NCBI GenBank assembly: GCA_963924565.1
Contig: OZ004609.1
Coordinates: forward strand, 15,128,001 to 15,192,000
Reading direction: 5' to 3'
DNA from: Ascidiella aspersa
Lineage: Eukaryota
DNA length: 64,000 nt
In this document: piece by piece, positions 1-30,700 of the stretch
Layout: every line of letters starts with the position of its first letter
How positions within the stretch are numbered: position 1 is the stretch's first letter
Program-made: the position numbers and the translations under genes
The notes under the pieces: generated by a model
What the model was told of the DNA's origin: nothing
Seen by the model: only the letters and a program-made list of their open reading frames with translations
Databases searched by the model: none

Positions 1-248
1 TTCTGTAGCCACACATCAGGCATTCATTTTACGTAGGTAAGCTTTGCGATGTTGCACTCCTTGTCGCTCAACATCCACACACTTTTAGAAAAGGGTCATA
101 ATCTCAAATTGCTCTGCAGAGTCGAATGTCAACGTAAAATTGGCCGCAATAAATAAGAAATTCTTTAGAAATAAAGAAAACAAACACATTCTGTAACCAC
201 ACATCAGGCATTCATTTTACGTAGTTAAGCTTTGCGATGTTGCACTCC
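1..248 (+). repeat. 60-bp direct repeat
   Basis: 1-60 is repeated at 189-248 with 2 mismatches. Confidence 0.85.
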
Positions 249-27700: not shown

Positions 27701-30700
27701 AAAAGCCTTTGATTCCATAAACCACACCTGGCTCACCCACACCCTTGTCACCCGCAATTTCCCGACCTGTTTTGCCAATTACCTAATCGCAACCCAAACC
27801 TTCGCCTCATCCGTATCCTAATAAATGGCTTCCCCTCTGAACCCGTGGCGATCAGAAGAGGTGTGAGGCAAGGTGACCCGCCAAGCCTCACCCTCTTCCT
27901 GATCGCCCTTGACCCAATCCTGCAGAACATTCAGCAGAACCCCTCCATCTCACCACCCCCAGCCCCTATCCGCAACCCCCCCAAACTGGTAGCCTACGCA
28001 GATGACGTAACCCTAACCCTCTCACACCCCCACTCACTACCCCCCGTTTTCGACACCTTAGCTAAATTCCAATCCGCGTCAGGCCTCGCCCTTAACCCCG
28101 ACAAAACCAAAGCCCTCCCACCCTCCCAACCCCTACCTACCTGCAATAAACTGGAACCCCCTAGCCATAACCCCCCTAAACATCCCAATTGGCGACCCAA
28201 CCCAAATTGACCACGCATGGACCACGGCATACAAAAAGTTTGAAAACAAGGCCTCACAAATTAAACACCCCTTTCTCACATTTGACACTAAATCTATCCT
28301 GTCTAAAACCCTGCTTCTCCCCCACTTTATCCAACTAGTCCATGTTTACCCCACCCCGGATCGCATCAAGAAAAAGATAAATAAAACACTACTCAAGTTC
28401 TTTATAGGCCCACGTAACCCGACAATTCCACTAGACACCCTGGCAGCCAGTCGCCCCCACGGTGGCTACTCAGTTGCAAATATCCCCCTATATTCAGACT
28501 TATTCATCCGCCCAATAGGAACCTATATGAAACATAGACTCTCCCACACCTCAGCAGACACCCACAGCCAGATAATTGAATACCACTAGCAATAAAATAT
28601 AACCTTAGACTCAAAAATACACTCCCCCACACTGTCTTCCCATCACCACATTACCAAAAAATCTAGAACCTCATACGGAAGCACGACCCAACCATAACCG
28701 AAATACTATCCCCTAAAATAAAACCTTTATACCTCCGCCTCACAACCCCACACCAATACGCAAACCCACACCCCAACCGCAACCCCCCGAACTGGTCACA
28801 AGTTCACCACCCCATCTTACCACCATACCTAAAAACATTCAACTACAAAGCAGCACGCAATGCATTAGCAGTAAAATCACATACAATCCCCAACATCCCA
28901 GCGTTAGAACCTAACTGCTATCTCTGTAACAAAAGATATGAATCAGATGTACATCTGTTCCACATGTGCCCCCAGAACCAGCCCCTCCTCAACCACGTAA
29001 AAAACATATACGCAGGCTTCACTATGTGCTCCACCACCTATTTCAACCACCAACACAGCCATATATTTTTTGTCACACCTCCCCACCCCCCCCAAACAAC
29101 GATCTAATCACGCTCCTGAACACCATACTTCACCACACAATTTGGAAAAAAAGAATCAAGAAAGCCATAGCCCCCACACCTGACCCCAATCCCACTCCCC
29201 CCAGCACTTAATCAATAATTTTAACCGTGCAATCCGGGCACGACACAGAATTGAAGAAGCTAAAACAAACCCACAATACCTAAACTTATACACACAGATA
29301 ATCACCCTCCTCTAGAATCTACCTAACCCCCTTAAAAACCCTACAAGCCAAACCCGACCCACAAATAGAGAGTACAGAAAATCCCTCCGCCCCTCTCTCC
29401 ATAACACATCAAACCCCATCCATTTCCAAGAGGGAAAAGTAATAACCACATCCATTTTGGTTTTTATGACGCCATCTTGTTTTTTCATCAGCCATTTTGT
29501 TTTTTGATTTTTGTTTTTTTTTATTGCTCTGCCTTAGCCAACTACTTTAAATGCATATCCTCGAAAGAGGGGAGCGACAGAAAAGGCAAATCCTTACTCC
29601 TTTGTTAATATCCTCTTTTTGTTAATAATTGGATCGATAAGCATACTCCTCCTTGCAGGAGGAGTGAAGACCAATTTCCTTTGTTACTCCATACCCTTTG
29701 TTAGGCACCCCAATTACTTTTACGCCCATAGTGTTGCGTACCTTACCTTGCTCCCGTCGCCCACTTGCTTTTTGTTGCCCGCAAAAAAATAAATAAAAAC
29801 CACGCAGGGCAATGATGAGCCCAAACCAAAGGGGGGACCTAGCAAATTGCTAGCCCCAACAACCCTGAGGTCACTGAGCCCTCGAAAAAAAAGAAGAAAA
29901 AAAAACGCATGCTCACACACGTACAATTATTTTTGCAGATGAACTAACAACGTCTACCTCGGCAAAAAACACACTTGTACGGCATTCGTGCTGCCTATTA
30001 CCTCTCTTACCAGCTTGTCAAAGCGGAAATACTAACAGATGTATTTTAAAGGGAATAGCACTTTCTATTATTTGTAATTTACATACTGTTTTTTTACCTT
30101 GTCCGTAAAAGCATGTTATTGTGTAAAATAATTGCCTACTCCTGCTGGGCCGTTTAACGTGCTTTTGTCGCACCGTAAACAGTTGCTACTAGCCGTCTTC
30201 AAAAACACAGCACCTATATACTGTGCAATTACTTCGCTATATTAAACAGAGAATGGTTACAATTTACGCGATGTCTGTTTAGTGACTGTGGCGTTAGCAA
30301 GACAAGTTATTAGAATTTACGACTCAACCTAAGTTAAAAATATAAAAACGTTGTTTAGCCCTCGGAACATGGCACGAGGTACGTGGTAACAGTTTGAGAC
30401 AATCCACAAACCTGGGTGGTTTGAACAGAGTCCCCAACAGGTAAAACTTGTTTTACGATAAGAGTTTTATTGCCTCTGTGGCCAGCTTTCATTGATTCTA
30501 TAATGTCTTTGACTCCTGCGTGTCGCTCAAGTTCGTGAATTTGCACAAACTTAGGATGGTCCGACACGTTACTCGGTCGGGGCATAAGAGGATGTGTAAT
30601 TACCAGTCCTGTTCCATCTGCGTGAAAAGTTAATAATACCACAGTTCGAAAACAAATCTTTAACGAATACTCCATGAAGAATTGACATATAATAAAAAAC

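What the first reader, a model, noticed from the sequence alone, without database searches (positions are those of the whole stretch)
29806..29882. Box C/D snoRNA-like k-turn module caps the 3' end of the L1/Tx1 retrotransposon
Seen: two nucleotides before the poly(A) tail the element reads AGGGC-A-ATGATGA-[55 nt]-CTGA-GCCCT. This gives a 5-bp terminal stem, a 3-nt bulge (AAU), a perfect box C (RUGAUGA) and a box D (CUGA) abutting the stem. Inside are a hairpin (GGGG..CTAGCA-AAT-TGCTAG-CCCC) and a second CUGA. Established: this is the geometry of the C/D k-turn bound by Snu13/15.5K (L7Ae family), and ~77 nt is typical snoRNA size. Inference: the family may use a host k-turn-binding RNP to protect, localise or mark its 3' end for ORF2 recognition. 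Alternatively it captured a snoRNA and now disperses it. I know of no description of this for L1/Tx1. Here it is antisense to CACHD1, so it would be expressed from the element, not from the host intron.
Basis: partly seen in the sequence, partly recalled or inferred. Interest (0 to 1): 0.78.

Follow-up and report, generated by a model that had tools for sequence, protein, structure and literature searches.

The report
LINE tails ending in snoRNA-like module
A group of jumping genes (L1-like LINEs) in this animal genome carries, between its poly(A) signal and its poly(A) tail, a small folded RNA module whose conserved ends look just like the kink-turn of a box C/D snoRNA, which suggests that the elements borrow a host RNA-packaging protein, although binding has not been tested.

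Summary
At 29806-29882 the sequence reads AGGGC-A-AUGAUGA-55 nt-CUGA-GCCCU, and the A-rich tail starts 2 nt later. This geometry occurs once in the window, against 0.01 per shuffled window.

It is not a one-off. A covariance model finds at least 99 copies in the genome, always at the 3' end of L1-like LINEs (RVT_1, zf-RVT) and before poly(A). At least eight variants keep GGGCAAUGAUG...CUGAGCCC while the interior is replaced by different, covarying hairpins.

New here:
- An AAUAAA hexamer lies about 5-13 nt upstream of the module in 39 of 46 loci.
- An abundant, distantly related L1-like family lacks the module and has AAUAAA 7-16 nt before poly(A).
- Of three competing helices, the terminal stem is best supported, but by only one compensated pair.

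Against a true snoRNA: no Rfam match, no 28S guide complementarity, no conserved C'/D'. RNA reads were too few to tell (4 reads).

Best reading: a selected 3' handle of C/D k-turn type. Binding by Snu13 is inferred, not shown. I found no description in print. Earlier notes of this scan report the same module elsewhere in this genome.

The parts
26856..27557 (+). ORF fragment with the end of an AP-endonuclease domain (LINE ORF2, degraded)
   Evidence: Pfam Exo_endo_phos, E 8.5e-4, 19.6 bits, below the 24.5-bit cut-off, residues 7-49
27845..28210 (+). Reverse transcriptase fragment of the LINE ORF2
   Evidence: Pfam RVT_1, E 1e-11, 45.4 bits
28153..29169 (+). ORF2 C-terminal region, broken, homologous to the zf-RVT-bearing C-termini of other module-bearing LINEs
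   Evidence: tblastn of ORF pieces of L034, L031 and L045 on the window element: 52-74% identity in pieces
29788..29797 (+). Two overlapping AATAAA hexamers (poly(A) signal) ending 8 nt before the terminal stem
   Evidence: AATAAA or ATTAAA lies within 40 nt upstream of the module in 39 of 46 unique loci, against 13 of 184 control windows
29806..29810 (+). 5' strand of the terminal stem (AGGGC)
   Evidence: 95.6% of cells paired over 18 representative variants
29811..29818 (+). AAU bulge (29811-13) and box C AUGAUGA (29812-18)
   Evidence: AATGATG is invariant in the 18 representatives, but most of them were found with a pattern that requires it
29819..29835 (+). GCCC-AAACCAAA-GGGGG segment: a possible small hairpin, or a rival partner for GGGC
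   Evidence: RNAalifold pairs CCC with GGG. The local hairpin GGGC/GCCC is favoured by energy in 7 of 10 V1-V3 representatives
29833..29857 (+). Inner hairpin (GGGG..CTAGC-AAATT-GCTAG-CCCC)
   Evidence: 2 of 5 inner pairs carry compensatory changes among 24 copies. Other variants have a different hairpin sequence at this place
29865..29868 (+). Inner CUGA within the conserved CCCUGAGG. Not a conserved D' box
   Evidence: It reads CCCGAGG in variants V4-V7
29874..29877 (+). Box D (CUGA) abutting the terminal stem
   Evidence: The box C G / box D C pair is G-C in 15 and G.U in 3 of 18 representatives
29878..29882 (+). 3' strand of the terminal stem (GCCCU)
29885..29905 (+). A-rich tail (decayed poly(A))
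   Evidence: Other copies carry pure A runs of 20-55 nt at the same place

Best explanation
The 77-nt stretch is one copy of a selectively maintained 3'-terminal RNA module. It belongs to a group of related L1-like LINE lineages and sits between the element's own AAUAAA and its poly(A) addition site. The invariant part is a closing helix (GGGC/GCCC plus one variable pair) next to an AAU bulge, GAUG(A/C) on one strand and CUGA on the other. This is the architecture of a box C/D kink-turn. The interior is a variable cassette of hairpins. My proposed mechanism is as follows. In the element's transcript the closing helix and k-turn form and are bound by a k-turn-binding protein, most likely host Snu13/15.5K, possibly with further C/D core proteins. 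This gives the RNA a compact, protected 3' handle directly upstream of the poly(A) tail on which reverse transcription is primed. The same closure loops the module out, so that AAUAAA and the cleavage site come within about 10-15 nt. That is the spacing seen in a module-less LINE family of the same genome. Shown: the anatomy, the conservation, the position of the poly(A) signal and the restriction to one clade. Inferred: k-turn formation, the identity of the binding protein, and the benefit (3'-end definition, stability, or marking of the template).
For: The exact geometry occurs once in the window, against 0.01 per shuffle. At least 99 model matches lie in the genome, out of 150 candidates scored. 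91 matches in 90 loci were aligned. In the copies aligned with their flanks the module sits at the 3' end, followed by poly(A) or an A-rich run. The LINE lineages that carry it share only 43-88% amino-acid identity in the ORF2 C-terminus and have unalignable 3' UTRs. Their modules are 77-92% identical. Variants V4-V8 keep GGGCAAUGAUG and CUGAGCCC around quite different interiors. The V4 ORF2 is 52-58% identical to V1/V2-type ORF2s, about the same distance as among V1/V2 lineages. A search anchored only on the 5' end finds mostly copies with CUGAGCCC or a one-letter variant before the tail. A search anchored on the poly(A) signal plus the 3' end finds the 5' end in 9 of 10. Among 18 representatives, the terminal stem plus the box C G / box D C pair is paired in 96.3% of cells, with one compensated pair (A-U to C-G); 13 of 500 shuffles reach the score. 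The two rival helices show no compensation and are reached by 500 of 500 shuffles. The V5 change that compensates the terminal stem breaks the rival 3' hairpin. AAUAAA or AUUAAA lies 1-19 nt (mode 12) upstream in 39 of 46 loci, against 13 of 184 control windows. The tail starts 1-3 nt after the stem in most copies. Ten sampled copies of zf-RVT LINEs with long ORFs, 8 of them one family, lack the module; the best model score was 8.8 bits. In 7 of those 8 copies AAUAAA lies 7-16 nt before poly(A). That ORF2 C-terminus is only 26% identical over 58 aa to a module-bearing one. Stand-alone snoRNA-like genes with the same termini exist in this genome.
Against: No Rfam C/D family matches any LINE module, even at E up to 10. 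For V1-V3 type modules the energy model prefers a local hairpin, GGGC-AAUGAUGA-GCCC, that would hide box C. Its probability is 0.43-0.91 in 7 of 10 representatives. Among 81 distinct copies, boxes C and D are no better conserved (0.70-0.94) than, for example, AAACCAAAG. Mutual information shows only subfamily signal plus one hairpin pair. Terminal-stem covariation rests on one pair in one variant family. The divergent variants were found with queries that reward the termini. No C' box is present, the inner CUGA is not conserved, and no guide complementarity to 28S exceeds shuffled guides; the one 10-nt match is in a single copy, among about 20 tests. The RNA run gave 4 reads from 7.79 million records read, so nothing shows a stable small RNA or maps the poly(A) site. 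Several copies lack box D and the 3' strand; these may be deletion products of dead copies.
Confidence: 0.5

Rival explanations
1. A stringent-type LINE tail. The module is the structure that the element's own ORF2 protein recognises to start target-primed reverse transcription. The C/D-like letters are simply part of what that protein reads, and no host snoRNP protein is involved.
For: The tail is conserved across diverged lineages, with a covarying stem-loop, directly before poly(A). Conserved structured 3' ends before poly(A) are described for some L1-clade LINEs of plants and a green alga (PMC3747384, passages read). The module is confined to one related group of LINEs and is absent from a distant L1-like family. 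That fits co-evolution with one reverse transcriptase.
Against: The interior hairpins, the usual recognition element, are the variable part, while the invariant part is exactly the k-turn consensus. A full RUGAUGA/CUGA/stem register is unlikely as an accident. No SINE partner sharing the tail was seen: 0 of 60 loci have a tRNA-like head within 500 nt upstream on the same strand. That is a weak test.
Confidence: 0.3
2. A purely structural spacer. The module matters only because its closing helix brings AAUAAA and the cleavage site together, as in HTLV-1. The k-turn letters have no protein partner.
For: The poly(A) signal sits at a fixed short distance upstream and the tail 1-3 nt downstream. 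The module-less family shows the same spacing without a loop-out. The HTLV-1 precedent of a folded 276-nt spacer is cited in PMC2645353 (passage read).
Against: It does not explain why a spacer would be inserted at all, nor why AAU-GAUG...CUGA next to the helix is invariant while the interior changes freely.
Confidence: 0.1
3. A captured, working guide snoRNA (or a snoRNA-derived retroposon) that the LINE merely disperses.
For: It has C/D box grammar. Stand-alone snoRNA-like genes with identical termini lie at contig 7 positions 31068874-31068932 (-) and about 21436696 (+). The first gets weak, sub-threshold hits to SNORD20/50/58 (E 0.6-1.6). snoRNA-derived retroposons are known from platypus (cited in PMC3747384).
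Against: No guide complementarity to 28S. No C'/D'. No Rfam match. The interior is hairpins. The module was never seen without a LINE 3' UTR and poly(A) signal upstream, apart from truncated copies. It has persisted through deep LINE divergence.
Confidence: 0.05
4. A chance resemblance in a young repeat, with no selected function.
For: Within the main family the whole module is uniformly about 85-90% conserved, as expected of recent copies.
Against: The termini are kept between lineages with 43-58% ORF2 identity and unalignable UTRs. The poly(A) signal position is kept. The chance rate of the geometry is 0.01 per window.
Confidence: 0.02

Closest known systems
Box C/D snoRNA terminal motif (k-turn bound by Snu13/15.5K/L7Ae)
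   Same: A 4-5 bp terminal stem, a 3-nt bulge ending in U, GA of box C opposite GA of box D, a U.U pair, a G-C pair, and an overall size of 52-90 nt. The roles of the individual k-turn positions are recalled knowledge.
   Different: It is not an independent or intronic gene but the last 77 nt of a LINE transcript, before poly(A). It has no guide, no C'/D' and no Rfam match. The interior is hairpins.
Stringent-type LINE 3' tails, including L1-clade examples in monocots and Chlamydomonas (PMC3747384, passages read)
   Same: A conserved, structured 3' end with compensatory changes, directly upstream of poly(A), shared by diverged LINEs.
   Different: Here the invariant part is a two-strand internal-loop motif that closes the whole module, not the loop or flank of a single hairpin. 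No SINE partner was found.
Telomerase RNA 3' domains of snoRNA type: H/ACA in vertebrates, C/D in Trypanosoma brucei, bound by Nop58 and Snu13 (PMC5855555, passages read)
   Same: The RNA template of a reverse transcriptase related to LINE RTs carries a snoRNP-type domain used for maturation and stability.
   Different: Telomerase RNA is a host gene. Here the carrier would be a selfish element's mRNA/template, and it is polyadenylated.
HTLV-1 3'-end processing, where a folded 276-nt spacer juxtaposes AAUAAA and the cleavage site (Bar-Shira 1991, as cited in PMC2645353, passage read)
   Same: The poly(A) signal and the poly(A) site are separated by a structured insert whose closure restores normal spacing.
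   Different: The insert is 77 nt rather than 276 nt. It lies in a LINE, and the closure carries a k-turn consensus.
snoRNA-derived retroposons (platypus, Schmitz 2008, cited in PMC3747384) and snoRNA-ended long RNAs (sno-lncRNA, SPA; recalled, not looked up)
   Same: A snoRNA-type fold joined to a retroposed or long RNA, with snoRNP ends that protect RNA termini.
   Different: In platypus the snoRNA is the cargo and the LINE tail is separate. Here the snoRNA-like fold is itself the LINE's tail and is followed by poly(A).

Membership tests
Box C/D snoRNA | Box C (RUGAUGA) near the 5' end and box D (CUGA) near the 3' end | tested here: met
   Window 29812-18 and 29874-77. In variants V4-V7 box C reads AUGAUGC.
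Box C/D snoRNA | Terminal stem abutting the boxes, in k-turn register (3-nt bulge, tandem G.A) | tested here: met
   Geometry scan: 1 site against 0.01 per shuffle. 96.3% of cells paired in 18 representatives. G.A pairing itself cannot be shown by sequence.
Box C/D snoRNA | Antisense guide of 10 nt or more next to box D or D' against rRNA or snRNA | tested here: not met
   Against the genome's 28S (L227) the best runs are 7-8 nt, no better than shuffled guides. One 10-nt run occurs in a single copy. 18S and snRNAs were not tested.
Box C/D snoRNA | Internal C' and D' boxes | tested here: not met
   The inner CUGA is 5 nt from box D, leaving no room for C'. It reads CGAG in V4-V7.
Box C/D snoRNA | Match to a curated C/D family model | tested here: not met
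   No Rfam match over any LINE module at E up to 10.
Box C/D snoRNA | Accumulates as a stable small RNA bound by Snu13, Nop56/58 and fibrillarin | tested here: inconclusive
   One RNA-seq run: 4 reads laid from 7.79 million records read, about 6% of the run. A paired-end cDNA library is not suited to 77-nt RNAs. Protein binding cannot be tested here.
Stringent-type LINE 3' tail | 3'-terminal sequence or structure conserved among diverged LINE lineages | tested here: met
   Modules are 77-92% identical, while ORF2 C-termini are 43-88% identical and the UTRs are unalignable.
Stringent-type LINE 3' tail | Stem-loop supported by compensatory changes | tested here: met
   Inner hairpin: 2 of 5 pairs compensated in 24 copies. 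Other variants have different hairpins at the same place.
Stringent-type LINE 3' tail | Partner SINE with the same tail | tested here: inconclusive
   0 of 60 loci have a tRNA-like head within 500 nt upstream on the same strand. Other kinds of head were not sought.
Stringent-type LINE 3' tail | Tail required for recognition by the element's RT | not testable with these tools
   Needs biochemistry.
L1/Tx1-clade LINE | ORF2 with AP endonuclease, RT and a C-terminal zinc-binding domain | tested here: met
   Window copy: RVT_1 plus a weak endonuclease end. Relatives: RVT_1 and zf-RVT.
L1/Tx1-clade LINE | Placement of the RT in the Tx1 branch; target-site specificity | not tested
   No tree was built. 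All 17 module copies listed at contig 8 positions 18.27-18.49 Mb lie on one strand, which could hint at target preference but was not followed up.
Self-cleaving ribozyme (hammerhead, HDV-like) | Match to a ribozyme model | tested here: not met
   No ribozyme family in Rfam scans at E up to 10. UGAUGAG resembles the hammerhead core, but no GAAA strand follows.

The most novel reading that the evidence does not exclude
A clade of L1-like LINEs has made a box C/D snoRNP-type kink-turn domain a fixed part of its RNA. It recruits host Snu13, and perhaps Nop58/Nop56/fibrillarin, to the extreme 3' end of the retrotransposition template. Telomerase RNAs use H/ACA or C/D domains in a comparable way. 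The snoRNP-like cap would define and protect the 3' end and could route the RNA through nucleolar or Cajal-body compartments before reverse transcription.
Probability: 0.35. Interest if true: 0.85.

Novelty: new variant of a known kind. Interest (0 to 1): 0.7.

Why it matters
Three things are poorly understood outside a few model elements: how LINE RNAs are marked as templates, how they get a defined 3' end despite weak poly(A) signals, and which host RNPs they exploit. A LINE clade whose invariant 3' feature is a C/D kink-turn would be a natural case of a retrotransposon borrowing the snoRNP assembly pathway. That would parallel SINEs that borrow SRP9/14 and telomerase RNAs that carry snoRNA domains. 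It also makes a concrete, cheap prediction: Snu13 binds a 77-nt RNA and GA-to-CC mutants do not. The arrangement of poly(A) signal, looped-out module and poly(A) site is a second testable idea on 3'-end formation. I found no paper describing either for LINEs. Those searches cover only the open-access library, and supplements were not available.

Tried and rejected
Rfam scans of the window region and of eight loci found no C/D family and no ribozyme over the LINE modules.

RNAalifold on the first alignment returned only a 3-bp CCC/GGG helix, because of gaps. It was not informative.

Per-column conservation and mutual information among 81 distinct copies showed only subfamily signal. Dead copies cannot tell selected positions from neutral ones.

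A scan of metagenome contigs with the termini pattern gave 120 or more stretches, about the number expected by chance in so large a collection. The model scored 80 of the 120 and found nothing above 20.6 bits (E 0.08). They are therefore not homologues. One contig holds three tandem snoRNA-like genes with the same termini; I did not pursue it.

Guide complementarity to 28S was rejected. The 9-nt identity of CCUGAGGUC with the 5' end of this genome's 28S is about what chance gives.

The hammerhead idea (UGAUGAG) was rejected: no GAAA strand and no Rfam hit.

The SINE partner search found no tRNA heads next to modules.

RNA reads were too few. One paper search ('snoRTE') matched an unrelated word and was wasted.

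Not checked: the CACHD1 claim, target-site duplications, the element's 5' end, 18S and snRNA targets, and the organism's identity. Earlier notes call it an ascidian.
Full report
THE OBSERVATION.
- AGGGC (29806-10), A (29811), AUGAUGA (29812-18), then 55 nt.
- CUGA (29874-77), GCCCU (29878-82), CG, then an A-rich tail (29885-29905).
- An inner hairpin (CUAGC 29839-43 / GCUAG 29849-53, within G and C runs) and a second CUGA (29865-68).

A script asked for the strict geometry: 5 Watson-Crick pairs, one nucleotide, RUGAUGA, 20-120 nt, then CUGA abutting the stem. It finds this one site in the 64-kb window. The mean in 200 dinucleotide shuffles is 0.01. Folding energy alone is not special (z = -1.68). 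Rfam finds nothing over the site even at E up to 10.

Upstream on the same strand lie a reverse transcriptase fragment (RVT_1, E 1e-11) and a weak endonuclease end. Relatives of the element carry RVT_1 and zf-RVT. The element is therefore a degraded L1-like LINE. I did not test Tx1 placement or the CACHD1 statement.

IT IS A FAMILY FEATURE. A DNA search of the window's own genome (308 Mb) gives 41 matches to the last 160 nt. When 30 loci are aligned with their flanks, the module sits directly before poly(A) or an A-rich run, and the sequence upstream of it differs completely between groups of loci.

A covariance model built from 24 distinct copies finds 99 matches at E up to 0.01 among the 150 candidates that were scored. 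This is a lower bound. 91 matches in 90 loci were aligned.

The carriers are related but far apart. ORF2 C-terminal pieces are 43-88% identical in protein between module-bearing loci. The window's element is 52-59% identical to L034, in three pieces. The modules themselves are 77-92% identical in DNA. A non-coding stretch that is kept while the neighbouring UTR is lost and the protein drifts to about 50% identity is under selection in the active lineages.

DEEPER VARIANTS. A pattern of the two termini with a free 40-70 nt gap gives 34 matches (reversed-pattern control 0). A 5'-anchored pattern (box C end plus any A-run) gives 105 overlapping matches (control 0). Together they reveal at least eight variants, which I call V1-V8. 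All share GGGCAAUGAUG at the start and CUGAGCCC at the end.

The interiors differ. In V4-V7 the stretch after box C is CUCCCC rather than GCCC. The central hairpin has quite different sequences that still pair, for example GGUGUC/GGCACC, GGUG/CACC, and a 10-bp CGACAAUU/AAUUGUCG type. The inner CUGA becomes CGAG.

The V4 ORF2 has zf-RVT and is 52-58% identical to V1/V2-type ORF2s. That is no further than V1/V2 lineages are from each other. So the interior can be exchanged while the ends stay.

Caveat: these searches require or reward the termini. A lineage with drifted termini and a drifted interior would be invisible. Two partial controls help. The 5'-anchored search did not require the 3' end, yet mostly returned copies with CUGAGCCC or a one-letter variant. 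The exceptions were a few chance hits, a few decayed or internally deleted copies, and one group of near-identical copies within 400 kb on contig 7. A search anchored on AAUAAA plus the 3' end returned the 5' end in 9 of 10 matches.

WHICH HELIX? GGGC has three conceivable roles:
- a local hairpin with the proximal GCCC, which would bury box C;
- no partner, with the distal CCUC instead pairing with the conserved GAGG as a 3' hairpin.

The energy model is undecided. The local hairpin has probability 0.43-0.91 in 7 of 10 V1-V3 representatives. The terminal stem has probability 0.36-0.91 in all 6 of V4-V8 and the stand-alone gene.

Counting pairs on 18 representative variants (alignment A3) gives:
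- Terminal stem plus the box C G / box D C pair: 96.3% of cells paired, one pair with changes on both sides, and 13 of 500 shuffles reaching the covariation score. The changed pair is A-U in 8, G.U in 5 and C-G in the 2 V5 rows.
- Local hairpin: 88.9% paired, no compensation, closing pair broken in 6 of 18, 500 of 500 shuffles as good.
- 3' hairpin: 87.0% paired, no compensation, 500 of 500 shuffles as good.

The V5 change that restores the terminal pair (GCCC-G with C-GGGC) at the same time breaks the 3' hairpin. So the terminal stem is the best supported of the three, but on thin evidence. The four G-C pairs never vary in lineages I could find, which says nothing either way.

Within the main family, boxes C and D are no better conserved than the rest. 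The only covarying Watson-Crick pair that mutual information finds is in the inner hairpin.

A NEW PIECE: THE POLY(A) SIGNAL. In 39 of 46 unique loci an AAUAAA or AUUAAA hexamer lies within 40 nt upstream of GGGC, at 1-19 nt (mode 12). It occurs in 13 of 184 control windows taken further upstream. Of the 7 loci without it, one is the stand-alone snoRNA-like gene and the others have one-letter variants. Contig ends in two DNA assemblies show further, different upstream sequences that also end in AAUAAA-like hexamers just before the module (table 7). The tail starts 1-3 nt after the stem in most copies.

As a control, I took ten zf-RVT matches with the longest open frames from the 150 listed and fetched 900 nt downstream of each. 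None has the module; the best score was 8.8 bits at E 1.1 with filters off. Eight of the ten are one family. In 7 of those 8 copies AAUAAA lies 7-16 nt before poly(A). That family's ORF2 C-terminus is only 26% identical over 58 aa to a module-bearing one.

So the module is specific to one group of LINEs. In that group it sits as an insert between a normally spaced signal and site. If the terminal helix closes, the path from AAUAAA to the cleavage site is about 10-15 nt, as in the module-less family. A folded 276-nt spacer that juxtaposes AAUAAA and the cleavage site is known from HTLV-1 (cited in PMC2645353, passage read). This supports closure of the module in the nascent RNA, independently of who binds it.

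IS IT A snoRNA? The grammar is that of a C/D snoRNA. The same termini occur on two stand-alone, tail-less, AT-rich snoRNA-like genes in this genome: contig 7 at 31068874-31068932 (-) and at about 21436696 (+). The first gets weak sub-threshold hits to SNORD20, SNORD50 and SNORD58.

The LINE module fails several membership tests:
- No curated family matches it.
- There is no room for a C' box, and the inner CUGA is not conserved.
- The segments next to box D or the inner CUGA show no complementarity to this genome's 28S beyond shuffled guides. 18S was not tested.

It is therefore not a methylation guide carried along. It works like a C/D terminal motif without being a snoRNA gene.

Expression could not be judged. 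The one RNA run with the same species label gave 4 reads on the 801-nt stretch, from 7.79 million records read.

MECHANISM. I commit to a protein-bound kink-turn handle. The closing helix and the AAU/GA...GA internal loop form a k-turn that is bound by a k-turn protein, most likely host Snu13. This compacts and protects the 3' end next to the poly(A) tail, where L1-type reverse transcription is primed. It also sets the poly(A) site.

I put about 0.5 on this reading and 0.35 on recruitment of Snu13, with or without further C/D core proteins (the novel case). The main rival is recognition by the element's own ORF2 protein, the stringent-type tail described for some L1-clade LINEs of plants and a green alga (PMC3747384), at 0.3. 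The two are not exclusive.

A suggestive parallel is telomerase RNA, the template of a related reverse transcriptase. It ends in an H/ACA domain in vertebrates. In Trypanosoma brucei it carries a C/D domain that binds Nop58 and Snu13 (PMC5855555, passages read).

NOVELTY. Five searches of the open-access library found no paper describing a C/D or kink-turn module at a LINE 3' end. They used combinations of snoRNA, Tx1, kink-turn, box C, box D, non-LTR retrotransposon, Snu13, Ciona and L1 clade. Subscription journals and supplements were not visible.

Two earlier notes of this scan (s1-790851 and s1-801579) report the same module on other pieces of this genome and reach a similar reading. I treated them as leads only. 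My tests agree with them and add four things: the poly(A) signal anatomy, the module-less control family, the comparison of three helices and the 28S test.

Noticed in passing
Own genome, contig 8, about 18.27-18.49 Mb (loci L002-L006, L013, L015, L016, L019, L026, L038, L045, L070, L095, L096): All 17 module-bearing LINE 3' ends listed in this 220-kb stretch lie on the + strand, and they come from several different variants (V1, V2, V4, V5, V6). This could be a one-strand transposon graveyard or piRNA-cluster-like locus, or a preferred target array.
   Followed up: no
Own genome: contig 3 at 22750-22828 (-) and 39282191-39282269 (+); contig 5 at 17238-17316 (-): Identical V4 copies with identical downstream flanks lie 17-23 kb from two contig starts, and 171 kb from the end of contig 3. 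In each case the 3' end points outward. They look like duplicated subtelomeric blocks holding an apparently young element (339-506 aa open frames at the zf-RVT match).
   Followed up: partly
L091:300-359 (-) = contig 7 at 31068874-31068932; L230, about 47-130 (+) = contig 7 at about 21436696: Two stand-alone box C/D snoRNA-like genes have the same GGGCAAUGAUGA start and a CUGAGCCC or CUGAGCUC end, with AT-rich interiors and no poly(A). The first has sub-threshold Rfam hits to SNORD20/50/58. No 28S target was found for it.
   Followed up: partly
L217-L219 and L221-L225 (for example contig 7 at 15313392 and onward): An abundant L1-like (zf-RVT) family with long open frames (up to 1277 aa at the match) and long pure poly(A) tails, apparently young. 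It lacks the module. In 7 of the 8 copies AAUAAA lies 7-16 nt before poly(A), with variable end points.
   Followed up: partly
L233 plus L096 (contig 8, 18309700-18311280) and three further loci: The V5 variant of the module follows, about 250 nt downstream, a 370-aa open frame with a CCHC zinc knuckle and a long K/R-rich stretch. That frame has no similarity to the ORF2 pieces. It may be an ORF1-only or internally deleted element that uses the same tail.
   Followed up: partly
Contig 7, 25.38-25.77 Mb (L074, L075, L078, L079, L085); also L062, L081, L084: These copies end ...CCAACCUCUGAAAAAA or ...CACCCUCUAAAA and lack box D and the 3' stem strand. They look like deletions between the short direct repeats CCCU/CUGAG. 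L002, L003 and L056 have a 9-nt deletion between the two CUGAG repeats.
   Followed up: no
Own genome, contig 5: 9.80, 11.90, 13.45 and 14.24 Mb (L227): Four full-length 28S genes lie megabases apart on one contig, and each listed one is preceded by partial 28S fragments within 1-3 kb. This is an unusual rDNA arrangement or an assembly effect.
   Followed up: no
L032:91-606 (-); L018, L039, L043: A cluster of three tRNA-Trp genes. In addition, tRNA-Ala(GGC)-like sequences recur near several loci and may be a separate tRNA-derived SINE unrelated to the module.
   Followed up: no
L138:10984-11931 (metagenome contig): Three tandem box C/D snoRNA-like genes of about 84 nt with the same GGGCAAUGAUGA...CUGAGCCC termini, in an unidentified organism. 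Most of the other matches in that scan are at the level expected by chance.
   Followed up: no
Window 29863-29871 and L227:1504-1512: The module's CCUGAGGUC is identical to nucleotides 4-12 of this genome's 28S rRNA as delimited by the Rfam model. A 9-nt match is about what chance gives.
   Followed up: partly
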